Program-made: the position numbers and the translations under genes
Notes under the pieces: model-generated
The model's input: the letters and a program-made list of their open reading frames with translations, nothing else
Databases searched by the model: none
Told to the model about the DNA's origin: nothing
Origin: Lytechinus pictus
Lineage: Eukaryota
DNA: 64,000 nt
Assembly (NCBI RefSeq): GCF_037042905.1
Contig: NC_087260.1
Coordinates: 24,738,001 to 24,802,000 of the forward strand
Reading direction: 5' to 3'
Shown: positions 4,241 through 40,200 of the stretch, piece by piece
How positions within the stretch are numbered: the stretch's first letter is position 1
Layout of the letters: every line of letters starts with the position of its first letter

Positions 4241-7200
4241 GTAAATTCTGTAACGATTTCGGTAACTCTATAAAAATAGCGCCTCTAGATTTTCGCCGTG
4301 GTACACATAAAGGAAATTCACTCATTATAATTCAAAGGTATGCGTCAAACTTTTGGAAAACCGCATGCCCTGGCAAAATGCGAATTTACAAAGAGGGCGA
4401 AAGTTTTCTGAATACATCAAAGACATGGTGAAATGTCCTTTTAAAGAGTCCATTAGCTTTGTCACAACTATTGTTTGGACATATAAGAATTTCATCCTGA
4501 TGATTTCAAGGTGCCCTGTATCCTATATCACTAATCGTGATAATATAAATTATGCCCTAAATAAGTTTAGTTTGATATTCGTTGTATATGATCTGTGAGC
4601 ATATGAGTTTTGTTTTATGTTCTACTTGCAATATTTCTTCAGGGCGATGAGATGCGCCAGGATTCTATATTTTCAGACACAGGAAGTGTTATTGTGACAG
4701 GGTTCTTAACACGATTTTAAGTTCATGATAAAATGATATGGCATAGTAATAAAACGGTCATTATACTCCTTCAATTACTTTTGGAGTTTTCTTCTGCTGT
4801 TTAACAGGACACATCGGTAATACACCAGAGCGATCGTGAAGGATTTACACCTCTTCACATTGCTATTGAAACTGGATTAACATCAATCGTTGAAGAGTTG
4901 ATTTCTCTCGGTGCTGATTTAAACCAGGCATCAAACGATGGCAAGACACCATTACATACTGCTATCAAACTATGTAACTGTAAGAAGAGACAAGTTGAAA
5001 TGACACCAGCTTTAGACCAGGTATAGCATACCTAATTAAATTAGGACTAGTGTGGCCCATGGGGAGGCGAAGGGCCTTGCCCCCTTCGACCTGATTATAT
5101 ACAGTATTTCATTTATTTTTATTTTGTTTGCATGGTAGACAACTTGTACACCACTGGATGGTTCCCGGTCAATTCATGCTATTAATCATTAAACCCCTTA
5201 GCTATGGCCGTAGTTTTTTTTTTATAATTATGTTTCTTTATGTATTCTGTTTTTTTTTAATGTAAAAAAATAAAGCATATTTTTTGGCACGTAATCCTCA
5301 TGTTTTTTTTTTATCGCAATCCGAATTTTGATTTAAAAAAAATCATTCAGATTTTCAGAGTGCGATTTTAAATGCAATCATTTTTTCCAAACCTGCTATT
5401 TTCCTATTTTTTTTCAATTTTTTATTATCAAAATAGATACAGCAAGAGAGTGATGACACCCTATCACCGCCAGAAGCTTTGATACAACTCCTAGTAAATC
5501 AAGGATCTAAGAAAGGCATCAAGGATAAAGGCGGGTATTTTCCAGTGCAGTACGCCAAGGATGAGCACATTAAGCAAATGGCATTCTATAGGTGAGAGAA
5601 ATAATACGTTATCCATGCTCCAACTTTGTGCAATAAAAACATATAGAGTCTTTATCAGAATAATCATCTACAAATTAATTACCATCGTCGCCTTAAATAA
5701 TTCATTTATTTTTTTTTTTTTATTATTTTTTTTTTAATTTTTTTTTTTTGGGGGGGGGGGGGGCTGGGTCGCACACCAGCCTTTGTCTCCTTTTACAGCC
5801 AGATTTACCTTGAATTTGTCCAAAATAATTATATGAACAAAGGGGGAATCATTTTATTTTATCCAAGTACAATTCTGAATAAACTGGCGTTGCCTTATAT
5901 TGAAATCAAATTGATTTTCTTTACAAAACCTTAATATTCATGAAAAAGCCCTGTGAAATCCAAAAAGATCTTGCAGACATGATTGCTCCTATATACTTGA
6001 ACAGTCAATCCTACCTAAGTAATCTTCCAGAGACCTTTTTCGTTGAGTATATCTTATAGTTCAATTTCAGTCCTTATACAAATGAATGTATGAAAATAGG
6101 ATACTGTTGCATACATTTGCTGATACCTACAAGTTATTTTACTCTATTTTTCCTTCTTCCTTTTCCAGGTCATCGGAAGAAGATTTTGATACCCCACGTG
6201 GCAAGTAGTTCTCTTGAGTCTTAAATGTCAATTTAACATTGAATTTTAACAGTCATCAATACAGAATTTTCCAAGGGTGCAGATATACATCGTTTGGATA
6301 TTTTTATGGGGGGGGGGGGTGGGGTGGGGTGGGGGTGCTTTGCAGAAATCTCAGTAATCCCTCCATTGACGATAAAACTCCTTAAAATAAGGAATCTAAA
6401 AAAATGATTATTTTCCTTGGTTCTACTAGTAATTTAATTTACACCTTTAAATCAAAAGATCGACCGTTTCCAAGATCAAAGACTCACCGCAGTATTGGTA
6501 ACGAAGGTGGAATCCTATACTTGGATAGTTGTGACGTCACAATGGCTATTCTACCAGGACCATTGGAGCCTGGCTCTTGTCACGATGTATCTATATCTCT
6601 GATTACTGAGGATCCACCATCAATCAAAGAGGATGAGTTTCTTACAGGTCATGGCATAGAAATCGATATCCCTCCTCAGTGGTACTACAACAAATACCGA
6701 CGCATAACTCTATGTCTCCCCCATGCGGCAGCACCCGGGAAGTCAAATAGACAGTCTACTGACGTCATTTGGAAACATAAAGAATTGACTTCAGGTGAGC
6801 TATCAACAAACGCAAAGTTTACTCATAACTGGTAATGCAGTGAAAATAGTCGACGTAAAAATGCCTTTTTAAGAAAGGCATAGATTTTTACTATTCAGTA
6901 TTTCAGTCAATAATTTGCTTGCATCATTCCCATCATTCGTAATGGTGTAAGGCTATATGCCTATAGTGTTATGCGTTTTTTGGAAATGTATAGTAATGAA
7001 TCAGATTGGTATCCTCTCTGCGCACTTTTTTTATTTTCATTAAATCATTGTGTGCGCTATGAACGCCTAGCTTAGCCGGGTAGTATAGGAGCGCCTTGAG
7101 CACCTAACAAGGTGGATATGTGCGCAATATAAATACCCTATATTATTATTATTATTATTATTATTGGCTCGTATGCATAGCAGAGCGAGACTATATGCAC

Positions 7201-10200
7201 TGCTTTTCTGTACAATTGTTTGGGGCATCCATTAACCGAACCGAAATGCTAATTTTGAGGACCATTTATTTGTCGATACCAGTTGGCAAGATTCTGAGTT
7301 TTAAAGTTGCGCACTCTTTTATTGTAAAACTCTTTCTTAGCAACCCTAATCGATTTTATTACTTTATTTCTTAAATTGGGCAATTTTGCTAATTTGCATA
7401 AATACAAAATGGCGGCCAGATGCCATCTTAAAAAACCTAACTTTTGAACCCCTTGCCCCGAAATGATGGGTAATTACTCTTTTTAGGGGTTTTGGGGTGT
7501 GTAGAATCACGTTCTGCTATCTATTTTGCAATTGAAATGTCATCTTCAGGTCAAATCCAAGATGGCCGCCAGATGATGCCATTTTGAAAAATTAACTTCA
7601 GAACGTTCTGTCACAGAATCATGAAAAATACCTCTTTTAGTGAGTACATTGTATTTGGTATGTTGATTCCATTTCTGTTAATAATTTTGCAATATAGGAT
7701 CATTCAGATAAAAAAGATTGTCGCTAAATACCATTATACAAAAAAAAATTCCCGAGACTATTGAACCTTGACCTTGAAGAAGTACTCTCCCCAAAACGTA
7801 CACGCTTCCCCAAAGAGGTATACTATTATGTGTAGGATCTCATGTAAGGCTATTTTAGTAAGAATGATTAATTTCTTTTAATCTCTCCATTATTAGTGGT
7901 CAAGTCAGGTCTCAGATGGTCAGATGATTGATATATTTCGTCCCTAACCGATCACCTTAGAATGAAACCATTCATTTCTGGAGTTCTCATCATTTGTTTA
8001 TGTCTATCCATTCTTTTTTAGTGGAAGTATTGTTTTTTCAATTAAAAAGTGATTTCTCCGTAACTTCAGAAAATTGGTTAACCTTCCTTTATAATTATCA
8101 TTGGACTTTTCGTGCTGACAAAAGGTCAGCATGAGTGCACTTTTTAGTCTCTTGTAGAAGATATGCTCCCAAAGACTGATCCATGGTCATATCATTCCAT
8201 AAGCACAGTTTGCTACAACGCTGGAACATCTTATAGCTTCCCTCAGTTCCTGTGAGCAGTGGCGTGAAGCAATTAGGCTGCGCCTGGCCCTTACTCTCGT
8301 TGGGATCTTCTCCATGCTTCTCCAGTATGTATTTGGCGAATGCACAGAAGGCATCTACATGTGGGCGCGTCGTGGTCTAGTGGTTCTAACTCTTGCCTTT
8401 CAAACAGAAGGTCGTGGGTACGAATCCTAGCCATGGCGGGTTTTCCTTCAGCAAGAAATTCATCCACACTGTGCTGCACTCGACCCAGGTGAGGTGAAAG
8501 GGTACCCGGCATGATTAATTCCTTGAATGCTTGAGCGCCTAGGCAGCCCAGCTAAAGCCGGGGTAATAATAGCAGGGCCCGCTGTGAGAACAGTTTTCGG
8601 AACTGAAGTGGCTACCCTGGGTAAATATACCGTTATCATTATCATTAGTATTATTGCATGTCCCTACCAAGCAGATGGGAAAATATTCTACATCAACCGG
8701 CTATGTGTAAAAACAATGGTCAAGACAGTTCTCATTCGTGAGATGTTGTACGGCATCGACGTCGCCCCTGCCTTTCATAAAGAAGCGGGAGTAGGTCTAC
8801 AAGACCTATTCATACAGCCGCCTGTCCTGTGAATGTAAGGAGTTTGGATCACCCATCAGCCTGTAAGACATCCCGATCCTGATCGACTCAAGAAACTGAC
8901 TGTGTTCCAGATATCTCTATCAACAGCACTCACTCGTCTGGTTGTAGTGGACTTCTCACCTACCTTGGATTGACTATCTGTCTCTAGTTCCCTTTCACTG
9001 GACAAGGAGATAAGCACCAGGATAGAAAAAAAATCTGTCACAGTCATGGCCTAGCTCCTGAACGGAAATAAGTCCTGGAAAACGTACGCCGATCAATAAA
9101 AGCGGCTAAACACCTCCCATGTCAGCTGCCTTGGATGTATCCTGCACATTAAATGGCAGGACAGAATGAAAAATATAAGGCCCTTCAGCGTACATGTACG
9201 TGCATGCTGGCATTCCCAGCTTATTCTCGCTCCTTAGTCAAAGGTGCCTCAAGTGGTTGGGGCAGGTTCGCCGTATGAAACTTTGGCAAATCCTAGAAGG
9301 GAAACGCCAATGTAAGGTGAGATGTGTAATTGGTCTCCATATAGATCACACCTCCGTTATAAACACACCTGCAAACGTGACATAAAACTTGCCGGCATAA
9401 ACACTTGTGCAGATGTAGATGATATTGGCCATCTATGGATTGCTACTAAGTACAGGGGTCAAGACGTCAGAAAATGATCGGAATGCTATACCTTGGCAGA
9501 CGAAAGACTAAGGAGGAAGGCTAGGGCAGCATCTCTGTCTGAACCTGTCTCAGCGCCATCCTCCTTCATCTATACAAATTTGCTTTTTTTGAGACAGCCA
9601 CTCTACATCGGAGCTCTACAGCCATACTCGAAAATGTAATACCTAGCGCGCTACACCATCGTCTTTTGAGACAAACTGATGCCTACTTATTATTGGGCAT
9701 TTCGATTTAGGAAAAATATGGAGAGAACACTTTCAAATTCAAATAAGACTTTAGTGCCTCTTCAGTACAAAAGTATGAATGGACATTAAAAAAAATAAAA
9801 AATACACGCGAAATTGATCGTAGCCCAAATTCTAAGGTGAGCGGTTAATGTCGAACGTCTGACAACATCTTAGATATGACTTCACCTTGAACTAAAAATT
9901 GAGAATTAAGAAAAGTGAAAGTGAAAAGTAAGAAGTGAAATACATAAGCTCTTTGACTATATGCCTCGGAAAGTAATTTTTCAAGATGGGGTTTGGCGGC
10001 CATCTTGAATTTGATCTGAAAATTATTCTTTATTGCAAAATTACATTAGAACTTGAATCAAACTACCAAATGACTAACGAATAGAGTTATTATTCATGAT
10101 TCTGGGGCAAAGGGTTAAAAAACTAATTATTTCAAGATGGCGTCATCTGGCGGCCATCTTGGATTTGACCTGAAGATGACCTTGTACTGCAAAATAGATA

Positions 10201-13200
10201 GCAGAAAGAGATTCTACACACCCAAAACCCCTATACAAAGGTATTACTCATCATTCTAGGGCAAGGCGTTTAAATTCAATTTTTCAAGATGGCATCTGGC
10301 GGCCATCTTGGATTTGACATGAAGATGACCTTATATTGCAAAAATAATAGAAATCGATTCTACACACCCCTAAATCCATAAAGGAGCTATTCCTCATCAT
10401 TATGGGGCATGGGGTTCAGAAGTTAGGTTTTTAAGATGGCATGTGGCGGCCATTTTGGATTTATGCAAATTAGCAAAATTGCCCGAAAGGGCAACTTTGG
10501 ACAACCAAGCTGAATTTGTTCTAGGACCCCATAAAACACGAATCAAGAAAAAAAAACCTCATCGGAAAAAAACATTTCTAGGTTCGAAAATGTCAAATCG
10601 ACTAAAAGGACATGAAGATGGCCTTATATTGCAAAAATAATAGAAATCGATTCTACACACCCCTAAATCCATAAAGGAGCTTTTCCTCATCATTATGGGG
10701 CATGGGGTTCAGAAGTTAGGTTTATAAGATGGCATGTGGCGGCCATTTTGGATTTATGCAAATTAGCAAAATTGCCCAAAAGGGCAACTTTGGGCAACCA
10801 AGCTGAATTTGTTCTAGGACCCCATAAAACACGAATCAAGAAAAAAACCTCATCGAAAAAAAACCATTTCTAGGTTCGAAAATGTCAAATCGACTAAAAG
10901 GACTTGGTCACGAGCATGCAAAGCTTTTTGCCTTTGCAAAATTAATGACTTGATATTACATTTCATTCATGGTTTGTCATTTATATGCATAGATATGGAT
11001 TTTACCGGTAAGCATCGATCAAGATTGGTTTGAAGAAATAAATCACATTTTGAAGAAGGATCTTCTGTAATATATACATCCTCCCATGAATGATCAATTA
11101 ACCAAGACCCAAATTCACGAATTCCGCTATCACGTAAAGAACGCACAAATTTCTTTTTAATCTTATTTTGCAAAGACAAATTTTCTGAAGAAGGACACCA
11201 CAAAACACAATTATGATTACTCATACGTATTGATGCAAGGATATGTGGATCTCTAAAGTGATTATAACAGTTGGAAATGATTTTGTTTAAAATATTGTTT
11301 CCTCTAGTTTTATTTACAATTCAGAAAATAAGCAGATCTACAATGCCATCACCATACAAAAAGTATCTCTTTGCAAAAAGTGATTAACACTTGTAGCTAT
11401 AAGCAATTAATAAGCAACGATACAAAAGAGGGACGTAGGCTATAAAATAGTTTTAAAGGACACTTGTATTAAGATACTCTAAACCACTATTTTCTGCAAT
11501 ATGCAATAATTGCTTTTACAGCTCATCGCCTCAAAGCATATGCCAATGAAGACGAAATGCAATCTACAATAAAAGAGAAACACGTCGAGGTCACCATCTA
11601 TGCTGATTTAGTGATTAAGGGCAAGATACAACTTTGGGTACCATTCGATATTCACCGTCACGCCACGGGGAAACTGATGGCTTGCACCCCTTTCCTTCCC
11701 GTTGATATGGTACAGGGCAATGATGTAACACTACGGATGTACATACACGAGGACATACCTTACATTGCTGAGGTAAACAGAAAATCTCGACTGTGAACTG
11801 TTTCTAAAAATCATTTAAGCAAAATATTCATATCTAATTGAGATCATATTGATGAATAATTGCTGATGATTGGTCAATTATGTTATGAAGTTCCAGAATG
11901 CTGTGTTCTAACCGTTCTAACCATAGACTTATAACGTATGAGGCGCCGAATGTACCAATATTATATAGAACAATTATTTGTTATATAATCATTATTTATT
12001 AAATAATAACTATTATTTATATATAATTTACATTTATTTGTAAATAACTATTATTATATAAAATATCATTTCTAATTATTTATATATAATTCCAAGTAAT
12101 ACTTCATTATTTGTAAATAATAATAGTTCGACATTCCATTATTTATAAATAATGATTATTTGTTTTTCATTATTTATAAATAATGATTATTTGTTTTTCA
12201 TTATTTATAAATAATGATTATTTGTTTTTCATTATTTACAAATAATGATTATTTGTTTTTCATTATTTATAAATAATGATTATTTGTTTTTCATTATTTA
12301 TAAATAATGATTATTTGTTTTTCATTATTTATAAATAATGATTATTTGTTTTTATATTATTTATAAATAATGACACTACATACTTCATTATTTATAAATA
12401 ATTGCAATTCGTTTTTCCGTTATTAATAAATAAGTTTTCTATTATTTATAAATAATAATTATTTATTATCAATGCCAGTGCACATTTCTTTATTTATAAA
12501 TAATTTGTTGAGTTTTCCATTATTTATAAATAATGATTATTTGTTAAATAATGAAAACGTCTACTTCATTATTTATAAATAATTTTTTCGAGTGCACCAT
12601 TATTCTCATTATTTATAAATAATCATTATTTAATGTTCGGGTTTTCCATTATTTATAAATAATTTTTTCGAGTGCACCATTATTCTCATTATTTATAAAT
12701 AATCATTATTTAATGTTCGAGTTTTCCATTATTTATAAATAAAGATTATTTGTTAAATAATGAAATATCTACTTCATTATTTATAAATAATAATTTAGTT
12801 TCAATATCCCATTATTTATAAATAATCATTATTTATAAACAATTTTTACAGTTTGCCATTATATACAAATAATCATTATTTATATACAAATAACCATTAT
12901 TTATTAAATAATGCCATTATTTATTATATAATGCCATTATTTATTAAATAATGGAAAACTCGCTATAACATGCAAATGTGGGACCGCCCATGATATGAAT
13001 ATTCATGATGCGATTTCCTTTTTCGTGATTTTTCTTCACAAATTTTTGTCCATTTCCTCTTCATAATGACATTTCTTAAAGCAATTTTCTAGGGATATGG
13101 TCTGATTTTAATATTCTTCATTTTCTATATAACTTCGTCTTCGTAGAAATATCAAAAAGTGTAATTTTATACGATTTTTCCTACAGTTCACAATCCCCAT

Positions 13201-16200
13201 AGGGCCCCATAGGCGCGCGTGTATCGTAGGGACAACCGGTGAATCGACGGAGTGCTCTTCATCGAAATACTACGTTGGTTGGTCCCCGGAAGTGGCGGGC
13301 GGAATTTAGCCCGAATCCTCGATGGAAGTAGATCAAGTGCATATGAGCTGAGAGAGTGAAATATCAGTGTACAGGCCCTTCTACTTTTTATAAATATTTC
13401 TTGTTGCTTTTTTTGTTAAGTTAATTTTTCCTGGTGTAGAGATAAGTTTCAGTTCTAATAATGCACTTCAAATACATTTTGGAGTGTCTGTTTGAGGCGT
13501 TTGGGGCGATTTCACCCTGGCCCCAAAATGCTCGCAATTAACGACAATACGGGGGCATATGATGACCCCTAAATTTTTAAAAACTTATTTTTCTATTGAA
13601 AATTATCACAAAATTCACCAAAAGTGTGCACGAAAGCCTTCGTATTTCACTTTTAAAACTCCAAAAAGTGCCCAAATGACAAGCTTGGTCGCTTCGCTGT
13701 GTCGCTTTCAACTTGAGAAAGTTTACGCGTCTGCTTCCCCCCCCCCGAAAGAAATTCTGTGAACGGGATACGGCCATGCTCTAAAGAGCCTGGCACATTG
13801 ATTTATGTATACTTTCATTTTCATTATTTTTATCTCATTATCATCATGGCCTTACGCAGAATTTTTTCCAGGGGGGCCGGGGCGCGAAATTATTTTTCCC
13901 ACCGAGTTCTGGACCAACATATGAATATTCATGACTTGCGTCTTTGGATTGAGAGTACGCATGCGCGTGGACTTTGCCTCGACCAGTGCCGATCGTAAGC
14001 ATTCACGTTGCTCAGAATGAATTAGCATCACCAAATTACCGGTTCCCTTTCATAGTTACATAGGCCTTATAGGCTTAGATCTATAAATATATATATCCAA
14101 TTCTTAAACACTTATTAAACTAGCTGCCATTAATGGCAAGACATGTGCAAGGGTAGGGCTAGCTTTGGTTAGCGCATTAACTTTACCTCAAATCTGGACC
14201 TGTCTAATGAATCAGTGTTGTAGTGCCTTGATGCTCGGCCTTGGCCTTATGGCGCCTTAATGCCTACTTTTTCAAAGCCTTGGCCTTGAGGATTTTGAGC
14301 CTTGAAATTTTAAGGCTTTAAGGCATTTTCAAGGCTTTTTCAAGGCATTTTGTATTTTGTACTTTCATTTGTTTTAAATAAGTAACTATAAATGTTTCAA
14401 TTGTTTTTTTAATATATTTAGTGACACTTATGCTCGATACTACCAATTACCATTAACAGTAGCAGAAGCAGTAGTAAGTGTATAGCAGTGTCATCAATTG
14501 TAATTGTCACCATTATCAAGAAATTCAAACAAATAATACATCAGTTATGAAAAATATCATTATGTGTTGGTAATGTGTTGTAATCATATGTTGATAATGA
14601 CAGTAAATAATAATGGTCATGATCAAGATAATAGTGCTTTGATGACAAGAATAATTTTTACATCTGACTGCAATTTTGACAACAATTTTCATACTTTTAA
14701 CATAGCTAACTCTAAAGAACGATAACAAGGTTGATTTCTATTCCATTAGGATTTTCCTTGTATTATTTTCTTTGGCCAACAAGAATGTTTTAAGTCTTAA
14801 TGATATTCTGAAAAGATTTGGTAAACTTGAACACAGTCTCAAATTTTATCATATCCAAATGGGTTATGTCAATGGCATGATGAGCCAGAAACTTTGAGGG
14901 GCCAAGCATGGCATATAGAGCAAAATTTCTGTCAAAAAAAGAAGAAAGCGATTGAAGCGAGCGAGTGAACAAAATTTGTACCCTTCTTTCTATAAAAAAA
15001 GCTAATTTTGCAATAGATTATTTAAAAAATAATATCACATTTACTCCATCTTTTCCTTTCCCTCCCCTCCCCCTTGTCTAAGTTTATTCTAAGTGGTGGG
15101 ACTTCTTCTTCTCTCTATCTCTCTTCTAAATTTTATTATTTGTTTTGGGTCAGATTGACAAAACAAAGGGGGAAAAAATGTTAACTTCTTTTTAATCATA
15201 TATCGTCCAACACTGAATCTCATTTCTCTACAGTGTCAAGAAAATAAACAACGTATTTGTTTTTGTGTCAATATGGTTTCAAGAAATAATAATTAACAAA
15301 AAATAATTAATATTATCAATAAATATTAATAATTAATGATTAATTAACTGTTTAATAAAAGTGGTTGTAAGCAGAAAAAAATATGAAAACTGACAAGAGT
15401 CCTAAAAATGACTCATTTTCAGTTTAAGCATTTGAAAATTTTAACTTGCGCTTTGTGCTTTCTTGCTCCCCCCAAAAGAAAAAATCCCCGTAGGATTTTT
15501 TTTTCCAAATGAAATATGCCCTTTTTAAAAAAGAAATACCCTCTTTGATAATAAAACATAATACATTTTAGGTTCGAAAATCACAGATTTTGAATCGTGC
15601 TTGCATCAATTATTGTTTAGTACAAAGTACTAATGGTTACAAAAATGTATAGAATGTTGCTTTATGGTTGAAATATCACAAATTTTTGGCTCGCTTCCTG
15701 CACTCGCATCATATTGTACTCGTTCTCTTCCCGTTCACAAAAAAATGCTTAGAATGTCCAGTTTTCAGGTTGGAATGTCATAAATTTTTGAGCTCGCGCT
15801 TTGCGCTCGCACTAGTTTTATTGGTGAGTTATGTATCTTATTTAAAATGCAGTAATTAACTGCTTCATTTACTGGTCAGTATATAAAAAAACAAGCGAGC
15901 GCAAAGTTATTTTTTAGTTAGATACACATCTTTTTCATGATTATAAAACCAGTTCAGAATAAAATAATTTCCATGTCTTATTACACGACATGTCAAGAAG
16001 TTTGAGCTGGCGATTCGCGCTGGCAACATTGCGCAAGGCAATAGCCCCATAATTGACCATAAATCAAGTTTTACAACTTCAGAATTGATTTTTTTTTCAA
16101 AACCGCTTGCTCGCTATGCTTTCTCGCTGAAAAGTAAAACCTAAATCACTTTAGAAAGCCTTTGCTCAACTTAATTTCTACAAAACACACAATTACTTCA

Positions 16201-19200
16201 CGCAGTTCATAATCTCATTTTGAAAATACATGTATCTGTTTGCACAAAAAAACTCATTTTGAAAATGGGTGCATTTTTGTTCTCTTCCCGTTCACAAAAA
16301 AAAATGCTTAGAATGTCCAGTTTTCAGGTTGGATTGTCACACATTTTTGCAATGTAAATCGCCTAAAGACAAATTATGGATTATGTGTACACAGGTAACT
16401 ATATCATTATTTTAATATTTCTCTATAATGAAATTATTTTTGTTTTAAATGTACAAAGGTTAAATTTTTTTCTCGCTCAGTCCCCTCGCTCACATACATT
16501 TTACCATGTGTGATGTCTGCCGCCTAAGTATTGTTAGATCATTGTTCTGTATATCGTAAGTTTGAAATGCCTTGGCCTTGAGGTTTTCAGGCCTTGGCCT
16601 TGGGTCTCCATGCATTGGCCTTGACCTTTGGTATTGAAGCCTTGGCGTTGGGTATTAAAGCGTTGGCCTTAGAGATTTGAGCCTTCACTACAACACTGAA
16701 TAGCCGACTAATGCAATGGTTAACTTCGAACTGGTTAATTCCGAACTTCACGTTTAATTAGGTTTAGACAAATTAGCTTATTTGCCCTGGTTTGATATGT
16801 CTAGTCCGTATACAAAACCAGTCCTAGATCTAAAAAAAATTATCTTAGTTCTAGTCTATTCTCTAGATCAAGACTCTGATCTATACGCTGTATCAGCATG
16901 GAACCACTAGTGTACCAAGGGGGGGGGGGCAGACTGCCCCTCTGACGAGTCACAACTGATTCAGGGGACGTGCCCCCTTTGAGAAGCCAAATTAATAATT
17001 TGTAATGTAAAAGTGCAATGAAAAAGACGTATATATCCCCTTTTTTGAACGTGAAGATTTTTCTTTGCTTGTCAATTTTTTTTTCAGCTAAGAAATCCAT
17101 AATTTGGGGTGAAGACCCTTTTTTTTTGGGGGGGGGGGCTTGTCACATTTTTTCGCGGACGAAATATCCTCTAAAAAATTTGCCCCCTTTTGGAAAATCC
17201 TAGGTACACCAGTGCGTGCATGGAACGTATTCTAACATCAGACACAAATTAACGTCAGTGATCTTGATCCCCGTCTTCACCCAAAATTAAGGATTTCGTA
17301 GCTGAAAAAAATTTGACAAGCAAAAAAAAAGATCTTCACGTTCAAAAGAGGGGACATACGTCTTTTTTCGTTGCATTTTGACATTAGAAATTATTAATTT
17401 GGCTTCTCAAAGGGGGGGGGGTACGTCCCCTGGATGAGTTGTGACTCCTCGGGGGGCAGTCTGCCCCCCCCCCCTTTGGTACATTAGTGGTTCCATGTTG
17501 ATAGCGCCTAGATCACAGTCTAGATCTAGAGACTAGACTAGAACTAAGATATTTTTTTTAGATCTAGGACTGGTTCTGTATACGGACTAGACATATTAAA
17601 CCATGGTAAATAAGCTAATATTGGTCCAAACCTAATCAAACGTAAAGTTCGTAATTAACCAGTTCGAAGTTAACCATGGCATTAGTCGGCTATTCCTATT
17701 AGTATTAGGCATTAAACAGGTCCAGATTTGAGGTAAAGTTAATGCGCAAAACTAAGCTAGCCCTACCCTAGCACATGTCTTGCCATTAATGGCAGCTAGT
17801 TTGATAAGTGTTTAAGAATTGGATGTATATATAGATCTAAGCCTATAAGGCCTATGTAACTATGTAAGGGTACCGGTAATTTGACGATGCTATTCTGAGC
17901 AACGTGAATGCTTACGATCGGCACTGGTCGAGGCCAAGTCCACGCGCATGCGTACTCTCAATCCGAAGACGCAATCATGAATATTCATATGTCGGTCCAG
18001 AACTCGGTGGGAAAAATAATTTCGCGGCCGGGGCCGGAGCATGACGCGCGTAAACTTTCTCAAAAAAATCTTGAAAGCGAGACAGCCACGGGACCAAGCC
18101 CAAATGACAAGCTTGGTCGCTTCGCTGTCTCGCTTTCATTCAACTTGAGAACGTTTACGCGCGTCTGCCCCCACCCCCGAAAGAAATTTTGTGAACGGCC
18201 ATGCTCAAAAGAGCATATGGCACATTGATTTATATGTACTTTTCATTTTCATAATTTTTATCACATTATCATCATGGCCTTACACAGAATTTTTACCGGG
18301 GGGGGGGGTTAGCAGCTAGGACGCGCGTAAAGTTTCTCAAAAAAATCTTGAAAGCGAGACAGCGACGCGACCAAGCTCAAATGACAAGCTTGGTCGCTTC
18401 GCTTTTTCAAGATTTTTATGAGAAAGTTTACGCGCGTCCTGCTCCCCCCCCCAGAAAAAAATATGCGTAAGGCCATGATGATAATGTGATAAAAATTATG
18501 AAAATGAAAAGTACATATAAATCAATGTGCCATATGCTCTTTTGAGCATGGCCGTTCACAGAATTTCTTTCGGGGGGTGGGGGCAGACGCGCGTAAACGT
18601 TCTCAAGTTGAAAGCGAGACAGCGAAGCGACCAAGCTTGTCATTTGGGCTTGGTCCCGTGGCTGTCTCGCTTTCAAGATTTTTTTGAGAAAGTTTACGCG
18701 CGTCATGCTCCGGCCCCGGCCCCCCTGGAAAAAATTCTGCGTAAGGCCATGATGATAATGAGATAAAAATAATGAAAATGAAAGTATACATAAATCAATG
18801 TGCCAGGCTCTTTAGAGCATGGCCGTATGCAGAATTTCTTTCGGAGGAGGGGGGGGGAGGGAAGCTAGCAGACGCGTAAACTTTCTCAAGTTGAAAGCGA
18901 CACAGCGAAGCGACCAAGCTTGTCATTTGGGCACTTTTTGGAGTTTTAAAAGTGAAATACGACGGCTTTCGTGCACACTTTTGGTGAATTTTGTGATAAT
19001 TTTCAATAGAAAAATAAGTTTTTAAAAATTTAGGGGTCATCATGCCCCCGTATTGTCGTTAATTGCGAGCATTTTGGGGCCAGGGTGAAATCGCCCCAAA
19101 CGCCTCAAACAGACACTCCAAAATGAATTTGAAGTGCATTATTAGAACTGAAACTTATCTCTACACCAGGAAAAATTAACTTAACAAAAAAAGCAACAAG

Positions 19201-22200
19201 AAATATTTATAAAAAGTAGAAGGGCCTGTACACTGATATTTCACTCTCTCAGCTCATATGCACTTGATCTACTTCCATCGAGGATTCGGGCTAAATTCCG
19301 CCCGCCACTTCCGGGGACCAACTAGCCTCTTGTCGAGGCCCTGTCGGCTGCTTTCCGAGCGAACATGGCAAAGCAAGGGAGAGAGCGAAGCAGAGCGCCG
19401 CGAGACAGGGCCTCTGGACATCTGACCCGAATTTCACCGACTTTCTTTTGTTTTTTATTGTTTTTACCAATTCACCGACCAAAAACTGGTCGGTGAAAAT
19501 CATCCAATGAGAGCGCGAGCTGCTATGACGTCATATTAAATATTCATGAGCTCATCTTGAATGGCGACCCTTGGATTCCGGCGAAGATCGAGTGACGACG
19601 AAATATCAAAGAGCGCTGAATATGACTCTAAAATGCTGAATATTGACCGATTTAAGGATTTGCAGGTCGATGAAATTAACTCTGCACTGAAAGGACGAGA
19701 TGTCTTTGTAAATCTACCCACAGGATATGGAAAAATGTAATATTTCATGCGATTCCACCGGTCGAACCGGGGCGTCGATTATCGATCTCCGCTGTGCAGT
19801 GCAGTGAGTGAGGGAAGCTGGGGTGGAGTTGTTGGGAGTTGACTGGTTGACTCGTGTCTGACCAGCGGCTGAGCAGTATCTCCCGGGAAGTTTCGGGGCG
19901 GTGATGGGTCTGTTACGGCCAGTAGTAGTAGTAGTAGTAGTAGTACCACTATTTGTAGCATTTTGCTGGTTATATCCCCTTTAGTGTCCCGCAATTAAAT
20001 GAATCCCCTGCAGAATAATGGACTACTATACTATATAGTATTCCGAACCCAAAACGAAACAGCTCTGACATTTCATTGGTTTACTCGGTGACCGGTAATA
20101 TCATGACTCATGTATATTCATTAGGAAGACGTTCCTCATGAATATATAATTCAGTTCAGATGTCAAGAGGCCTCGCGCCAGGCCTAATTCGCTTCGCGAA
20201 TTAGGGAATCCCTCGCTTCGCTCGGGAAGCAGCCGCCAGGGCCTCGACAAGAGGCTAGGGACCAACCAACGTAGTATTTCGATGAAGAGCACTCCGTCGA
20301 TTCACCGGTTGTCCCTACGATACACGCGCGCCTATGGGGCCCTATGGGGATTGTGAACTGTAGGAAAAATCGTATAAAATTACACTTTTTGATATTTCTA
20401 CGAAGACGAAGTTATATAGAAAATGAAGAATATTAAAATCAGACCATATCCCTAGAAAATTGCTTCAAGAAATGTCATTATGAAGAGGAAATGGACAAAA
20501 ATTTGTGAAGAAAAATCACGAAAAAGGAAATCGCATCATGAATATTCATATCATGGGCGGTCCCACATTTGCATGTTATAGCGAGTTTTCCATTATTTAA
20601 TAAATAATGGCATTATATAATAAATAATGGCATTATTTAATAAATAATGGTTATTTGTATATAAATAATGATTATTTGTATATAATGGCAAACTGTAAAA
20701 ATTGTTTATAAATAATGATTATTTATAAATAATGGGATATTGAAACTAAATTATTATTTATAAATAATGAAGTAGATATTTCATTATTTAACAAATAATC
20801 TTTATTTATAAATAATGGAAAACTCGAACATTAAATAATGATTATTTATAAATAATGAGAATAATGGTGCACTCGAAAAAATTATTTATAAATAATGAAG
20901 TAGACGTTTTCATTATTTAACAAATAATCATTATTTATAAATAATGGAAAACTCAACAAATTATTTATAAATAAAGAAATGTGCACTGGCATTGATAATA
21001 AATAATTATTATTTATAAATAATAGAAAACTTATTTATAAATAACGGAAAAACGAATTGCAATTATTTATAAATAATGAAGTATGTAGTGTCATTATTTA
21101 TAGATAATATAAAAACAAATAATCATTATTTATAAATAATGAAAAACAAATAATCATTATTTATAAATAATGAAAAACAAATAATCATTATTTATAAATA
21201 ATGAAAAACAAATAATCATTATTTGTAAATAATGAAAAACAAATAATCATTATTTATAAATAATGAAAAACAAATAATCATTATTTATAAATAATGAAAA
21301 ACAAATAATCATTATTTATAAATAATGGAATGTCGAACTATTATTATTTACAAATAATGAAGTATTACTTGGAATTATATATAAATAATTAGAAATGATA
21401 TTCTATATAATAGTAGTTATTTACAAATAAATGTAAATTATATATAAATAACAGTTATTATTTAATAAATAATGATTATATAACAAATAATTGTTCTATA
21501 TAATATTGGTACATTCGGCGCCTCATAATAACGGCGGGTTTTTGTGACATAAAAACACAATGAGACGCATTATCAGTGATCAGTGGCGTACCCAGGATTT
21601 TCCAAAGAAGGGGCAAATTAGTCCGCTAAAATAATTGACAAGCCAAAACAAAAAATAAAGAGGTCTCCAACCACAAATAAAGGACATTCCGTACCAGAAT
21701 AAAACAATTGACAAGCAAAAAGAAACAAAGGTCTTCAACCGCAAATAAGGGACATCTGGGATCAGTTGTGACTCGTCAGGGGGGGGGGGCAGGGTTACGT
21801 CCCTTGCATTAGTTGTGACTCGTCAGGGGGTGGGGCAGTCTGCCCCCCCTTAGGTTCGCTAGTGTCAGTGATTTAGAGAAAATCGCACCCTGTAGAGCAT
21901 TTCAAGTCAACAATTTTAACTGATAATTGTTAGAAGCTTGCATCTGACTGGTCGGAGTAAATTTCCATTAGTATAAATCACTACATGAAACACGCCCCTA
22001 TCTACCTTTCCTTCCGAATAAAGATAGACATCTTTGCTTATCATCATGTATTGCTACTTTAGATCAACGCATTAACCAAACACTGTATAATCAGGTATAA
22101 TCACAGTTCAATAAACAATACAGTAATATGCCCCTTCCATGCCTCAATCCTGCCACAGCAAATCACACAATTAGTTTTTTAATTTTGACTTGCACTTATC

Positions 22201-31200: not shown

Positions 31201-34200
31201 GCTGACAAGATAATCTAAGGAATGAAATGACAAATGGTTGACTTTGAATCATATACGCAATTCATTCGTATACCTAATACAAGTAAGATTATTTAAGAAT
31301 GATTAATGAATCACAAAAAGAAAAGTATGGAATCATACAACTCTAAGAACACACCTTAAAAGTTCTATCCTTGATCAAACAGTAGGCCTACATTGGCATT
31401 TAATCGTTATCAATATATGATAATATCAAGCAGGAGGATACTCCAAGCAAGACATAGTTGAATGGATGGAATCTGGGGAAGTAAAACCAGCGGATTCAGA
31501 ACCTGACCGGTCAGCCGCAACGCCTTTAGATGACCAGAAAGGGGGAACAGAACCTGTTCATCGTATCTCGTCAATGAGCGGTCATCATGATGAAGTCCCA
31601 GTTCAAGGCTTTGATATTCAGATGAATGTCACTGATGATATCGGCATTATTCGGCTTGAGGAATATGGTATTGAAGTTCACGTTCCATCGGGTGAAGCTT
31701 ACAGCGCAAAAGACATTGCTGTGGATGTTATCGATGAGGTTCCACCTGATTTGCTCACAGTACTGAAGGAAACTGGAGCTATCATAACCGTTGGTTTGAA
31801 GATGTCGCCTTCTGATGCATCATTTGAGAGACCAGTTAAAGTGACAATGCCACACTGTGGTGTGTTCCAAAAAACAGAATCTGCCCAAATCGTCACCTAT
31901 TATCGCAAGAATGGTAAGGTCTGAACAAATTTTCATTTTTTTTCACTTTCAAATTTCAAAGCAAAGTCATTACTGTTTCATGTCAAATGACATACTGAAT
32001 ATACTGTATGTCTACCTACAAAACCTGATGGTTCTTATTAATATCCCATCATGATTTATGTTGTGTTGTATCTGATTTATGTTTCTTTGTATTATCTTTA
32101 AATGGAAATCAAACAAAGAATCAAATTTTATTGAACTGAATTGCAATTTTGGATTTTTTTTAGGGGGTTTATATAGATATAAATATAATCAATCAGTAGG
32201 CAAATCATAATAGAGAGACTAAAATATGTGAAATGAAATGTCAGTTTACATTTCAATCTTTATCAAGCTTTAACATGCATTGTCATGATTACTTTAGTTA
32301 GTGATGAGAGTTGTTATTCACTCAATATCAGGGCCCTGGCCCCGAGAACGATTTTTGTCTCGCCTGCGACTAGAGATGATATGATATTTGATGTGGAGTG
32401 CCACATAGTTCGATTTTGCGACCACTTCTGTTTTTAATTTATATCAAAGATATAGTAAATTCTTCCCCAATTCCTTCTTTTATTGTACATGCTAATGACA
32501 AACCTCAGGCTTTGTAAATTCTTTCGTTCCGGTTTCAGTTCGTGCATTTAATAGCCATACTTGAAATTATGTTACCCCCTGCCTATATCTTACTTTCTCT
32601 TATCTTTGCTTGTTGATTTGTATAATGTTTAATATATGTATCGTGTAATCTTCTGTGTGTATCATGTAATTTTCTAAATTATTTTGTGCGAACAGATTGA
32701 ATTTCCATTTGTACTCGATTGCAATTGGACAATAAAAATATCTGAATCTGAATCTGACACCAACATTTTACTATCCCACAGAAAGGTAGATGAATTAATA
32801 GATAGAATGAATTTGGAATTGAAAAATGTTTCGTCGTGGTTTAAATGTAAGAAGTTATCTGTACACATAAGTAAACTCATTTTGTTTATTTTTTTACTTC
32901 TCATAGGAATGACAAATTTCCCCCAAGACATTTCGAATACTGATGAGCCCATGATAACAAATATGTATACGTATAAGATATATGATATGAATACTATACA
33001 AATAGCTATTTTTATGTATAAATATCTTTACAAACTGCTTCCTCTTATATTCACCGATTTATTTTCGTATTTAACACAAACCTGTCGAAATATTTACTTA
33101 GAAAATCCCAGAACACGATTAAGTTTTTGAAATGACATCATAACTTAGAAAGTATATAGGTGTAGTTCATGAAACCTATAAAAAAAGGTGATCAAGTAAT
33201 ACTGGAGATTCTGCCTGAGTTTCAGATCACATGACCAAGGTCAAAGGTCATTCAGGGTCAATGAACGTAGACTATGTTTGGGGGATAAATATCGAAATCA
33301 TAACCAAACGATTAAGTTTTTGAAATTTCATCATAACTTATAGAGTATGTAAACCTAGTGCATGAAACTTGGACATAAATATGATGAAGCATGATTAAAC
33401 ATCCTGCTTGCGTTTCAGGTCACATGAACAAGGTCAAAGGTCATTTAGGGTCAATAAACTTTGGCCATGTCGGTGGTGTTTTTTGAATTATCATTGTAAC
33501 TTTGAAACTTTATGGAGCTAGTTCACAGACGTCTCTGAAATTCGATAAAGTGTCATTCCAGTGGGCATATAAGGGCTTCTATTTTCACAGTAAGTATATT
33601 GATTCGTAAATTTGCTTCATATTTTTTTCTCATTTATTGACTTTGATTTTATCATCGTATTTCGACGAATAGTTTCAGACAGTTTTACGGCAATCCCTTC
33701 AACCAAAAGAAGCCTGCAATGCATTGTTAGACAACGAGACCTAGATATCTACCTAAACCATTTTTCGGAATTCTGGATTGTAGCCCTCTTCACATGGGTA
33801 TTCATTGGAAAACGAGTTATTTGCACTCCTTATATTCCGGTGTCAACTCCAAAGAATGCAAAGCATGTCTTGCGTCTGCATGTACGAGACGAAAACTTCC
33901 CAGAAAGAAAGGTAGGCCTCTTCTATTTTCCTTTTCCTATTGCATTCATCATAACTGTTTTCCAACATGCAGTGTGCTTTTTCCATTAAAACTATAGTTC
34001 AATCGCACTTTTTGCTTATCAAATAGCTAGCACTGTACTTTCCCCTTTTTTGTCTCGCGTGAACAAAGTTTGGCAGAGACCAGTGATCCGCATTTTCCTG
34101 TTGGTCTCTAAGTCCGTTGGTCTGCAACAAAACTATTTTTTGTCCAACTTGCTCTCATTTCTTCATTTCTACATCAGTTATGTTCATACTTGGTACGTGT

Positions 34201-37200: not shown

Positions 37201-40200
37201 GCCCAGAGGGGCTCTAATTAATATCAACAGAAGAAATACAAATGCCAACAAACTATATTACACAATATTAATATTAAAATAAAAATGACCAGTGACTTTT
37301 TCACAACATACCAATGATACCACTAGTTCAGACTGTTCTGCACCAGATCTATTGGCTTAAGCAAGTGGCGTAATGAGTAAAAAAAAATGAGGGGGCTAGA
37401 TATGGCAGCTGAAGCAAAAATATTGAACTTTTCAATACAAAAACCTATATTTTGACATAATATTAAGAAAATAATATTCCACTCTTTCCCTTTCCTTTTT
37501 TCTTTCCTTTTTTTTTTTTTTTTTCTTGGCCGTGAACCACTTGGGGGCCCCCAATTCCCACCCCCATCTGTACGCCAGTGGCTGAATAAGTTACGTTCCC
37601 AGATTTTGCAAGGGCTGAGATTTAGGCGTTTCATTGCACTAACGCCCCAAACTGCCCCTCTTTCTCTACAACTCACGTGCAGTATCATTCATTCAATTCG
37701 TATTAAGCAAGAGTGCATGCAGGCAATCACGGCAGGCAATACATCTGAGCATAATGTATTTCACTTTTACAACTTCGGATTTTAATCGGCTCCGGAATCA
37801 AAGCTTGTTATGTCCCATATTCATAATCTTTTATGATCAGGATGTTCTTTGAATATCATACTATTTGATGTTTAACTCTTAACCAAAACGTATGCTCTGG
37901 AAATGCAAAATTTCTCGCCGTTGAAATAGAAATCCTACAAACGGAGTTTTCAGATCACTTGTGTGGGACATAAACTTTGTACAGCATAGAATAAATAAAA
38001 AAGGAGAACACCATCGATCCTCCATAACAGGGGTTATCGAGTGCTAAATTGGACAAAATCTGAGGAAATCAATTAGCAATTAAGTGTCAAGTAAAGAGTT
38101 TTTGTTTTCTCTTTGTATTAAAATGATCACCTAATCCTTATTTCCAGGTTACTAATAGATACATTTTTTTCTCCCCAATTTTTCCTTATTTTTACTTTAT
38201 TTTATACCGGCTCCCGAGCGCCACTCCGCAAGGCTCGGTGCGCCACAAGTGGCGCGCGCGCCACCATTTGAGAATCCCTGCAATAGACTAATTTAAAATG
38301 TTACACGTTTACAGAATAAGGTACAAATTATACTATATATATATATATAGTTTGATAAAGGACAAAACAACCCGTCCTAAAATATATCCACCCTTCCCAA
38401 CCCCCCCCCCCAGAATAGAGAAGAAAAGGGGGAGAATGCCCTGAGAAGATGGATGGGTGCTGCTGTACGTAGATAGAACACATGCCGTCGTGGACTCAAG
38501 CAAACTGGATTCAATGATTCATATACCGAACAAAAGTACGAATATGAATAGGAGCAAAAATTGTGGAGATTAAATTGGTGCGTCAATGATATTTTCTTAA
38601 TATTGATACTGACCAGACTCTTGACAAACATGTGCACATTGAATGCTAGGTCAGTAAGAAATAAGGCTACCGATATCGTTGAATTTATAACTGATAATAA
38701 TTTTGACATTGTTGAACTGACTGAGACCTTGTTGAAGGATTATGGTGATGTTATTACAGGAAACTGTACACCTGAAGGATACACCTTCTATCATACGAGT
38801 CGACAAGGAAAAGGTGGAGGTGGTGTGGGACTGGTGTACAAATCTGCACTGTCAGTCAAGTCAGAAGCTGTACCACATTTCAAGTCTTTTGAAGTTTATC
38901 GAGCTCGTGTGTCATGCCAGTTGCGTTCCCTTGTTCTCCTTGTCATCTATCGTCCAGAAGTAGTGGAAGAGCAAGGACAACGAATACCTTACAGTCTATT
39001 CCTTGAGGAATTTGCGGCCCTACTTGACTCACTTGTTCTTGAGTCATCTGAGGTTATCCTGACAGGAGACTTCAATATATGGGTCGATGTTTGGAACGAT
39101 GTACGGGCTAAGCAGTTTATAAACATACTTTCTTCATATGGAATGAAGCAGCTTGTACAAGAAGCGACTCATTTTCATGGCCATACACTGGACTTGCTTA
39201 TTACCCGGGAGTCATCCACCATATTTTCCCATGTATATGTTATCCTGGGACTGTCTGACCATCATGCTGTCCACTGTAAGCTTGATTTAAAGAAACCGTC
39301 TCCTTCTCGTAGGACTGTTATAACTCGCCCTCTACGATCGATGAACAGAGAAAAATTCCGATCTGGAGTCCATGAATATCTGTCGCAGATTGATATTGAG
39401 AATAACAACCTCTCTTTGTCTATCGACAGTTATAATCTTTCTCTAAACAGTCTTCTTGACAAGCTAGCACCTAAAAAGACTAGGAGTGTTATCATCAAAC
39501 CCTCAAGTCCATGGATGACTGAGGAAATTCATGCAGCTTAGTGTCGTAGGAGACACCGAGAGCGTAAGTGGAGAAACACAAGAAGTGAAGAGGACCGCAA
39601 ATTTTATAAGAAACAACGGCAGGGTGTTTCTCAGGAAATTGGGCAGGCAAAAACAAAATACTACTCAGAGTGTGTTGAAGAATGTGAAGGCAATCAAAGA
39701 CGTCTTTTCACTGTAGTAGATACTTTGGTTCATCGTGAGAATGAGTCCGTTCTTCCAGTTTCCTCTTCTGACCAGATACTGGCTGAGGATTTTTGCCAGT
39801 TTTTCTTTAACAAGGTCACCAAGATACGTGATGACATTGACGCTGAGTTGCAGTTAGAACAACGTGTGCAGCAATATGAATCATTGCCTGTTCCATTGAT
39901 GACTGACTTTCCTCCGGCTTCTGTAAGTGAGATCAGGAGGGTTGTTGTGGATTCTCCAGCATCGTCATGTGAGCTAGATCCAGTTCCTGCTACAGCATCT
40001 ATATAACAGGCTCTCGTTAAGCCTCTCCTGAAGAAAGCAAATCTTGACAGGCAAGAATTTTCAAGTTATCGACCTGTGGCAAATCTAAGCTTCTTATCCA
40101 AGGTTATTGAACGTATTTTTGCAATACGTATTAGGTCCTTCCTTACTGAAAATGACCTTCAGAACAACTTCCAATCAGCTTACCGAGAGAAACACAGTGT

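What the first reader, a model, noticed from the sequence alone, without database searches (positions are those of the whole stretch)
11937..21527. 9.6-kb whole-element palindrome with TAT..ATA ends and a 6-bp TSD
Seen: after removing nested insertions (14213-16698, 18026-18722, 19323-20257) the two halves are inverted copies right up to a ~155-bp spacer (17117-17272). The TSD ATAACG is perfect, so it moved as a unit, and there is no transposase. The central MITE is complete on the left but truncated on the right, implying the palindrome formed by inverted duplication of one end. Knowledge (from memory of the Repbase scheme): TAY..RTA termini with a 6-bp TSD fit IS3EU. The modular AT-rich arms recall Foldback/sea-urchin TU elements. 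Sitting in an intron, it could form kilobase dsRNA in the pre-mRNA.
Basis: partly seen in the sequence, partly recalled or inferred. Interest (0 to 1): 0.7.

Follow-up and report, generated by a model that had tools for sequence, protein, structure and literature searches.

The report
Nested foldback transposons in sea-urchin intron
The 9.6-kb "palindrome" is an ordinary 4.5-kb copy of a young, roughly 700-copy, protein-less foldback transposon with IS3EU-type ends, and it looks bigger because a second hairpin-shaped transposon and a small one later landed inside it.

Summary
In detail: inverted arms, TAT..ATA ends and a perfect ATAACG duplication sit exactly where stated. Two paralogous sites on the same contig carry the uninterrupted target with a single ATAACG, so the boundaries and the 6-bp TSD are proven.

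The architecture was misread. The 30-bp terminus occurs about 1,400 times in the genome. Twenty fetched sister copies (median about 4 kb, 19 with perfect 6-bp TSDs) cover 11937-13883, 18026-19322 and 20258-21527, and nothing else. A third element sits at 19323-20257.

With 60 bp of host context, the host/passenger junctions are unique in the genome. The composite therefore has no sister copy; the passengers probably arrived after the host element inserted.

TA..TA ends plus a 6-bp TSD match the published IS3EU/GingerRoot hallmarks. No transposase partner was found in about 53 copies inspected, and none turned up in a search for elements sharing the terminus.

The scan had already met this family on other DNA (s1-324912, s1-294541, s1-306904). 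This is a new member of a known kind, of modest interest.

The parts
11931..11936 (.). Left copy of the 6-bp target-site duplication ATAACG of the host foldback element
   Evidence: Paralogous empty sites carry a single ATAACG.
11937..13883 (+). Left arm of the host foldback element. Invariant terminal domain 11937-12102; array of 10.6 x 31-bp repeats 12103-12433; further repeats carrying the 16-bp palindrome ATTATTTATAAATAAT to about 12953; non-repetitive inner domain about 12954-13883.
   Evidence: Covered by 15-20 of 20 sister copies. Tandem repeats. 16 exact copies of the 16-mer in this arm and 0 in the other 54 kb of the window. Terminal 230 bp invariant across 42 arms.
13875..13883 (.). 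Left copy of the 9-bp duplication GGCCGGGGC made by the nested element (the right copy is 18026-18034)
   Evidence: junction sequences.
13884..18025 (.). Nested, unrelated long-TIR (foldback-shaped) element of 4142 bp. Ends GCGAAATTATTTTTCCC...; arms 13884-14209 plus 16698-17116 against 17273-18025; loop 17117-17272.
   Evidence: No sister copy of the host family covers it. Its terminus occurs 324 times forward and 321 reverse in the genome, 0 in the control, in pairs 1.3-12 kb apart. Arm identities 93% and 88%. Junctions with the host are unique in the genome.
14210..16697 (.). 2488-bp module with CAGTGTTGTAGTG...CACTACAACACTG ends inside the left arm of the nested element. It is a passenger that travels with that family.
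   Evidence: Terminus found 183 times forward and 204 reverse. In at least 20 listed loci it lies about 300-600 bp (mostly 330-350 bp) inside a terminus of the nested family, as it does here. The right arm has 14 other bases at this point, so it is not a clean empty site.
18035..19322 (.). Centre and inner right arm of the host element. Inner left part 18035-18306, loop about 18307-18443, right arm from 18444.
   Evidence: Covered by 15-20 of 20 sister copies. Inverted pairs 18026-18138 with 18609-18721 (100%) and 18168-18306 with 18444-18582 (94%).
19323..20257 (.). Second passenger: a 935-bp MITE-like element. Ends TAGCCTCTTGTCGAGG...; flanking duplication GGGACCAAC (19314-19322 and 20258-20266; its length is ambiguous, 7-9 bp).
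   Evidence: junctions. Terminus found 522 times forward and 524 reverse in the genome. Its junction with the host is unique in the genome.
20258..21527 (-). Outer right arm of the host foldback element
21528..21533 (.). Right copy of the TSD ATAACG
4805..5023 (+). Ankyrin-repeat exon candidate upstream (context)
   Evidence: Pfam Ank, E = 7e-12.
31424..31921 (+). ZU5-domain exon candidate downstream (context)
   Evidence: Pfam ZU5, E = 2e-8.

Best explanation
The interval is one insertion of a young, non-autonomous foldback DNA transposon family. The family has about 700 copies of roughly 4 kb. Each copy is a near-total palindrome with arms of about 2 kb and a loop of about 70-340 bp.

The host element (4.5 kb without passengers) inserted by cut-and-paste into ATAACG and duplicated it. 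The site lies between an Ank exon and a ZU5 exon of an ankyrin-like gene, so it is probably an intron. Afterwards two unrelated non-autonomous elements inserted into it: a 4.1-kb foldback-shaped element about 340 bp from the host's centre, and a 0.9-kb MITE in the right arm. A palindromic insert near the centre of a palindrome leaves the whole still looking like one large palindrome, which misled the first parsing.

Shown: family membership, boundaries, TSD, nesting order and uniqueness of the composite.

Inferred: mobilisation in trans by an IS3EU/GingerRoot-type (integrase-like DDE) transposase that makes 6-bp staggered cuts. Also inferred: the iterated 16-bp palindrome ATTATTTATAAATAAT (13-16 per arm) serves as subterminal binding sites.
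For: - Terminus found 697 times forward and 717 reverse, 0 in controls.
- 19 of 20 fetched copies, plus three long copies, have perfect and mutually different 6-bp TSDs with identical TATGAGGCGCC ends.
- Empty paralogous sites carry one ATAACG.
- The coverage map separates family DNA from foreign DNA.
- Uninterrupted copies are 94-100% palindromic.
- Inner-arm identity between copies is 98.6%.
- Each passenger has its own TIRs, its own TSD and a family of hundreds of copies.
- The host/passenger junctions are unique.
- IS3EU: 'always TA..TA termini, TSDs usually 6 bp' (PMC10045372). GingerRoot: TA...TA and mostly 6-bp TSDs, whereas Polinton ends AG..TC and Ginger elements end TG..CA (PMC6839031).
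- The 16-mer is confined to the arms.
Against: - No transposase was found in any of about 53 copies inspected. The long copies carry a DIRS-like retroelement, low-complexity DNA or non-coding cargo.
- A genome-wide search for the 20-bp terminus followed by a non-foldback continuation found no recurrent alternative element.
- The IS3 and IS481 profile hits that could be inspected were retroelement integrases.
- The stand-alone candidates could not be fetched.
- GingerRoot TIRs are 100-150 bp, not 2 kb.
- That the Ank and ZU5 exons belong to one gene is inferred, not shown.
Confidence: 0.85

Rival explanations
1. A single 9.6-kb whole-element palindrome arose by inverted duplication of one end. 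Its centre is 17117-17272, 18026-18722 is a later MITE insertion, and it transposed as a 9.6-kb unit.
For: 18026-18722 is itself an inverted repeat bordered by GGCCGGGGC. The outer TSD is perfect.
Against: All 20 sister copies contain 18026-18722 and none contains 13884-18025. 13884-18025 has the termini of an independent family of about 320 copies. The junctions are unique in the genome. The TSD proves movement only of whatever lay between the ends at the time of insertion.
Confidence: 0.03
2. The same foldback family, but mobilised by a transposase outside IS3EU/GingerRoot: an undescribed or domesticated enzyme, or another superfamily that makes 6-bp TSDs.
For: No partner sharing the ends was found. 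Most described foldback elements belong to Mutator or P (PMC4079207).
Against: The 6-bp TSD in 22 of 23 copies does not fit Mutator-type foldbacks (8-10 bp). From my own knowledge, it also does not fit P (7-8 bp) or hAT (8 bp). Among the 6-bp groups that the two cited papers describe, Polinton and Ginger have different terminal dinucleotides.
Confidence: 0.2
3. It is a member, by descent, of the classic TU foldback elements of sea urchins.
For: The host group is the same. The layout is the same: an outer repetitive domain, an inner non-repetitive domain, a middle segment, and passengers that also occur elsewhere in the genome. From memory, this is how Hoffman-Liebermann et al. 1985 described TU elements.
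Against: From memory and unverified (the papers are not held), TU1 has 8-bp TSDs and 15-bp repeats. Here the TSD is 6 bp and the repeats are 31 bp. Earlier notes describe separate TU-like families with 8-bp TSDs in this genome (s1-320086), which I did not test.
Confidence: 0.08
4. Assembly or read-foldback artefact.
For: Long palindromes are a known artefact class.
Against: There are hundreds of copies at different loci with different TSDs. The passengers are arm-specific. Paralogous empty sites exist.
Confidence: 0.01

Closest known systems
IS3EU/GingerRoot DNA transposons (non-autonomous derivatives)
   Same: 5'-TA...TA-3' termini and a 6-bp TSD. Some copies carry foreign cargo (B1: 15 kb), as GingerRoot does with gene fragments.
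   Different: No transposase link was shown. The arms are about 2 kb and make up about 95% of the element, against 100-150-bp TIRs in GingerRoot. The arms carry arrays of a 16-bp palindromic motif. No paper in the searchable library combines IS3EU with foldback architecture.
Drosophila Foldback (FB), Tetris and Galileo: foldback transposons of the Mutator and P superfamilies
   Same: Very long TIRs with internal tandem repeats of variable number, a short middle, no coding capacity and modular variation between copies.
   Different: The TSD is 6 bp, not 7-10 bp. The ends are TA..TA. The palindrome runs almost to the centre.
Sea-urchin TU elements (Liebermann et al. 1983; Hoffman-Liebermann et al. 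1985; from memory)
   Same: Sea-urchin host. Outer repetitive and inner unique IVR domains, a middle segment, and inserted segments that are themselves dispersed repeats.
   Different: TSD length (8 bp against 6 bp) and repeat unit (15 bp against 31 bp), both recalled from memory. No sequence comparison was possible.
Nested MITE/TE insertions in introns
   Same: Three layers of non-autonomous DNA elements, each with its own TIRs and TSD.
   Different: Nothing unusual, except that a palindrome nested inside a palindrome mimics one larger palindrome.

Membership tests
IS3EU/GingerRoot | Termini 5'-TA...TA-3' | tested here: met
   All 23 paired copies and the window copy read TATGAGG...CCTCATA. 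Criterion from PMC10045372 and PMC6839031.
IS3EU/GingerRoot | Target-site duplication usually 6 bp | tested here: met
   22 of 23 perfect 6-bp TSDs and one matching 5 of 6. Empty sites carry a single ATAACG.
IS3EU/GingerRoot | An autonomous relative with matching termini that encodes an IS3/IS481-like DDE transposase lacking the HHCC domain | tested here: inconclusive
None among about 53 copies inspected. No recurrent non-foldback element shares the 20-bp end. Stand-alone IS481-profile hits exist but their DNA could not be fetched.
IS3EU/GingerRoot | Repbase rule for non-autonomous elements: same TSD length and terminal alignment over positions 1-11 (at most 1 mismatch) with a classified member | not testable with these tools
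   Rule quoted in PMC4455052. No Repbase sequences are on hand.
Foldback transposons (structural class) | Long inverted arms with internal tandem repeats forming most of the element, a short middle and no transposase | tested here: met
   Copies are 94-100% palindromic.
Mutator-type Foldback (FB/Tetris) | 8-10-bp TSD | tested here: not met
   6 bp. Criterion from PMC4079207.
Sea-urchin TU elements | 8-bp TSD and 15-bp outer-domain repeats (from memory); sequence similarity to TU1 | not testable with these tools
   The original papers are not held and no TU1 sequence is available. The 6-bp TSD and 31-bp repeats observed here differ from the remembered values.
Polinton/Maverick | 6-bp TSD with 5'-AG...TC-3' termini and polymerase/integrase genes | tested here: not met
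   The termini are TA..TA and there are no genes. Criterion from PMC6839031.

The most novel reading that the evidence does not exclude
The roughly 700-copy foldback family is the first foldback-type lineage of the IS3EU/GingerRoot superfamily. It is still active in a laboratory sea urchin. Its transposase comes from an element (or a domesticated gene) that does not share its 20-bp ends. In that case recognition would rest on the short TA-terminal motif, on the arrays of the 16-bp palindrome ATTATTTATAAATAAT, or on both.
Probability: 0.15. Interest if true: 0.55.

Novelty: new member of a known kind. Interest (0 to 1): 0.3.

Why it matters
The main value is a correction. A single copy of nested palindromic elements can be parsed in two self-consistent ways, and only sister copies tell which piece is the guest.

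For the biology, the family is abundant (about 0.35% of the genome), very young (98.6% identity between copies) and has clean 6-bp TSDs. Some transposase was therefore active recently. If that enzyme is IS3EU/GingerRoot-type, this would extend foldback architecture to a third superfamily, after Mutator and P. It would also offer many natural substrates for studying a little-known integrase-like transposase.

The locus-specific claims (kilobase dsRNA in a pre-mRNA) remain speculation.

Tried and rejected
1. Arm-to-arm homogenisation. Inner-arm identity within copies (98.8%) is about the same as between copies (98.6%), and only 7 of 44 arms have their own partner as nearest neighbour. There is no strong signal. 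The lower BLAST identities of 85-93% seen earlier were repeat-number gaps.

2. Autonomous partner among long copies.
- B3 carries a DIRS-like retroelement (RT plus tyrosine recombinase).
- B2 has low-complexity frames.
- B1 (15 kb of cargo, perfect TSD) and B4 have no recognisable domains.
- Unpaired termini L005, L022 and L029 have canonical interiors.

3. IS3 (NF033516) and IS481 (NF033577) profile searches of the genome. The top hits are retroelement Pol integrases; L059 was verified as RNase H + H2C2 + rve. I did not try to get that DNA by another route.

4. Exclusion search with IUPAC 'not' codes. It is leaky, because copies shifted by indels pass, but it shows no recurrent alternative continuation.

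5. Reads. They are dominated by dispersed repeats in the flank. There is no usable junction or empty-allele evidence. RNA depth is about 0 in the unique flank, and the low two-strand RNA signal on the terminal domain cannot be assigned to this locus.

6. Rfam miRNA hits in the hairpins are far below gathering scores (59 bits against 195), so I rejected them as generic hairpins. No tRNA was found.

7. The TU-element papers could not be retrieved.

8. The findings search by sequence was blank.
Full report
**1. Observation**

The repeat finder and a self-BLAST confirm collinear inverted blocks that begin at 11937 and end at 21527:
- 11937-12662 pairs with 20802-21527 (99%).
- 12647-13286 pairs with 20258-20897 (100%).
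- 13278-13883 pairs with 18713-19322.
- 13883-14209 pairs with 17710-18026.
- 16698-17116 pairs with 17273-17695.

The blocks are interrupted only at 14210-16697, 18027-18712 and 19323-20257, and there is a 156-bp spacer at 17117-17272. The junctions read ...CTTATAACG|TATGAGGCGCC... and ...GGCGCCTCATA|ATAACGGCGG....

**2. It is a family, not a one-off**

The 30-bp terminus occurs 697 times forward and 717 times reverse in the 812-Mb genome, allowing up to 3 mismatches, with 0 hits in the reversed-pattern control. Most hits come as +/- pairs 3.5-4.3 kb apart.

I fetched 20 complete copies. Nineteen have perfect 6-bp TSDs, all different from each other, and one matches at 5 of 6 positions. All have identical ends. 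Three long copies (10.6, 12.9 and 18.8 kb) also have perfect 6-bp TSDs.

In the non-repetitive inner arm, different copies are 98.6% identical, against 98.8% for the two arms of one copy. The family is therefore very young, and there is no strong arm-to-arm homogenisation. Uninterrupted copies are 94-100% palindromic with loops of roughly 70-340 bp. The first 230 bp of the arm are invariant across 42 arms.

The arm has four parts:
- a 166-bp terminal domain;
- an array of 31-bp repeats (10.6 units here);
- further 40/80/209-bp repeats;
- a non-repetitive inner domain of about 0.9 kb.

The perfect 16-bp palindrome ATTATTTATAAATAAT occurs 16 times in the left arm and 13 times in the right. Sister copies carry 19-30 each. 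It does not occur at all in the other 54 kb of the window.

**3. Correct parsing of this copy**

I mapped the 20 sister copies onto the window. All of them cover 11937-13883, 18026-19322 and 20258-21527. None covers 13884-18025 or 19323-20257.

That element (13884-18025) has its own termini (GCGAAATTATTTTTCCC...), a 9-bp TSD (GGCCGGGGC), and its own arms and loop. Its terminus occurs 324 times forward and 321 times reverse in the genome, in pairs 1.3-12 kb apart.

The 2.5-kb piece at 14210-16697 has CAGTGTTGTAGTG ends. At 20 or more other loci those ends lie at the same offset of roughly 330-350 bp inside that family's terminus. It is therefore a passenger that travels with the nested family, not a fresh insertion here. 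The opposite arm has 14 unrelated bases at that point, so it is not a clean empty site.

The piece at 19323-20257 is a 935-bp MITE-like element with its own TIRs, a GGGACCAAC duplication and a terminus found 522 times forward and 524 times reverse.

Without its passengers the host element is about 4.5 kb, close to the family norm. The nested element sits about 340 bp from the host's centre of symmetry and is itself a palindrome, so the composite still reads as one big palindrome. A single copy allows two self-consistent parsings, and the sister copies decide between them.

**4. Did the composite move as a unit?**

The host/passenger junctions were searched with 60 bp of host context and up to 3 mismatches. 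They occur only at this locus. The 30-bp junction of the second passenger is also unique. With the family 98.6% alike, a sister composite would have been found.

The simplest reading is that the passengers arrived after the host element inserted. A single cut-and-paste move of an already loaded element cannot be excluded.

A 15-bp G-rich flank of the nested family recurs at three other loci but not with longer context. This hints at a target preference of that family.

**5. Empty site**

The reconstructed target (24 bp of left flank ending in ATAACG, then 24 bp of right flank) occurs uninterrupted at C16:24899518 and C16:25020647. These sites are about 150 kb and 271 kb downstream on the same contig, and each matches 46 of 48 bases with a single ATAACG.

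These paralogous empty sites prove the boundaries and the 6-bp duplication. They also show that the host region is segmentally duplicated and that the insertion is specific to this paralogue.

**6. Context**

An ankyrin-repeat exon candidate lies at 4805-5023 (Pfam Ank, E = 7e-12). A ZU5 exon candidate lies at 31424-31921 (E = 2e-8). Both are on the + strand and they flank the element. An intronic position in an ankyrin-like gene is therefore plausible, but it is inferred; no spliced read was seen.

In two RNA-seq runs the unique 1 kb next to the element (10928-11912) had about 0 depth. DNA contigs were short and broke at repeats. Read-through transcription, dsRNA and an empty allele all remain untested.

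**7. What moves it**

[quoted passage not shown] " [quoted passage not shown] Of the other 6-bp groups those papers describe, Polinton ends AG..TC and Ginger elements end TG..CA. Mutator-type foldbacks make 8-10-bp TSDs (PMC4079207). On structure, the family therefore fits IS3EU/GingerRoot and none of the alternatives considered.

The defining feature is a matching transposase, and it was not found:
- None of about 53 inspected copies encodes one.
- The IS3 and IS481 profile hits that could be examined are retroelement integrases.
- A search for the 20-bp terminus followed by a non-foldback continuation returned no recurrent alternative element. It did reveal a second subfamily with a GATTG terminus.

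Several IS481-profile hits cover nearly the whole profile in stand-alone frames of 580-800 aa.

Earlier scan notes report an autonomous IS3EU with an intact transposase in this genome (s1-311670). That note names the species as Lytechinus pictus. I verified neither point.

**8. Comparison and novelty**

Structurally this is a foldback transposon with the same domain logic as Drosophila FB, Tetris and Galileo. From memory, it also shares that logic with the sea-urchin TU elements: an outer repetitive domain, an inner unique domain, a middle segment, and passengers that are dispersed repeats themselves. It differs in TSD length and end sequence.

No paper in the searchable library combines IS3EU with foldback architecture. 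Sea-urchin genome papers only list IS3EU in repeat tables.

The scan has already reported the same kind of element on other DNA (s1-324912, s1-294541, s1-306904). I file it as a new member of known kinds. What is specific to this locus is ordinary nesting.

**9. Verdict**

- The architecture and origin story are corrected.
- The superfamily assignment is supported by two structural hallmarks but lacks the transposase link.
- Interest is modest (0.3).

Noticed in passing
window 13884-18025; genome loci listed: The nested long-TIR family (about 320 copies) is very heterogeneous in size (1.3-12 kb between paired ends). It regularly carries a CAGTGTTGTAGTG-ended module about 330-350 bp inside its terminus, sometimes in both arms (for example C1:19786773-19789301). 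This is a modular, TU-like organisation.
   Followed up: partly
G000 C1:12167857, C17:18448100, C3:12887334: Three other copies of the nested family are flanked by the same 15-bp G-rich sequence (C/T)AGGGGGGCCGGGGC, without the longer host context. This may be a target-site preference of that family. Two of these copies are 4.88 kb long.
   Followed up: partly
genome-wide: A second subfamily of the foldback family has terminus TATGAGGCGCCGATTGTACC and diagnostic changes further in (...GTTACATAATCATTATTCATT...). Several foldback termini are interrupted by an element that begins CAGTGCGTCCC.
   Followed up: no
G000 C1:16954900-16973673 (L051+L055); C2:42535298-42549118 (L054+L058): An 18.8-kb family copy with a perfect TSD (CTCTTC) carries 15.2 kb of internal DNA with no recognisable protein domain. 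A 13.8-kb pair of termini whose flanks match at only 4 of 6 positions shares pieces of that cargo at 76-89% identity.
   Followed up: partly
G000 C16:24899518 and C16:25020647: The flanks of the insertion site recur twice within 271 kb on the same contig (46 of 48 bases identical). The Ank/ZU5 gene region therefore appears to be tandemly or segmentally duplicated.
   Followed up: no
window 6988-7184 and 8367-8760: Very high RNA and DNA read depth, with loose ends reading ...GGTTCGAATCCCAGCC... This is a tRNA-derived SINE-like repeat in the left flank, abundant in transcripts.
   Followed up: no
window 38561-39541 (+): A 326-aa open frame with an Exo_endo_phos endonuclease domain: a non-LTR retrotransposon fragment.
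   Followed up: no
G000 C2:30595703-30608648 (L053): A DIRS-like retroelement (RT, RNase H and a tyrosine recombinase) is inserted 120 bp inside the left end of a foldback copy.
   Followed up: partly
G000 C16:26231133, C17:25538721, C20:7470007, C3:73913818, C14:1133106: Stand-alone 580-800-aa open frames match nearly the whole IS481 transposase profile (positions about 15/50 to 283 of 284), unlike Pol integrases, which match only the core. They are candidate integrase-like DNA-transposon transposases. Their DNA could not be fetched.
   Followed up: no
23 TSDs of the family: There is a weak position bias in the 6-bp target: G at position 1 (9 of 23), A at position 4 (13 of 23) and C at position 6 (12 of 23). 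The sample is too small to call a consensus.
   Followed up: partly
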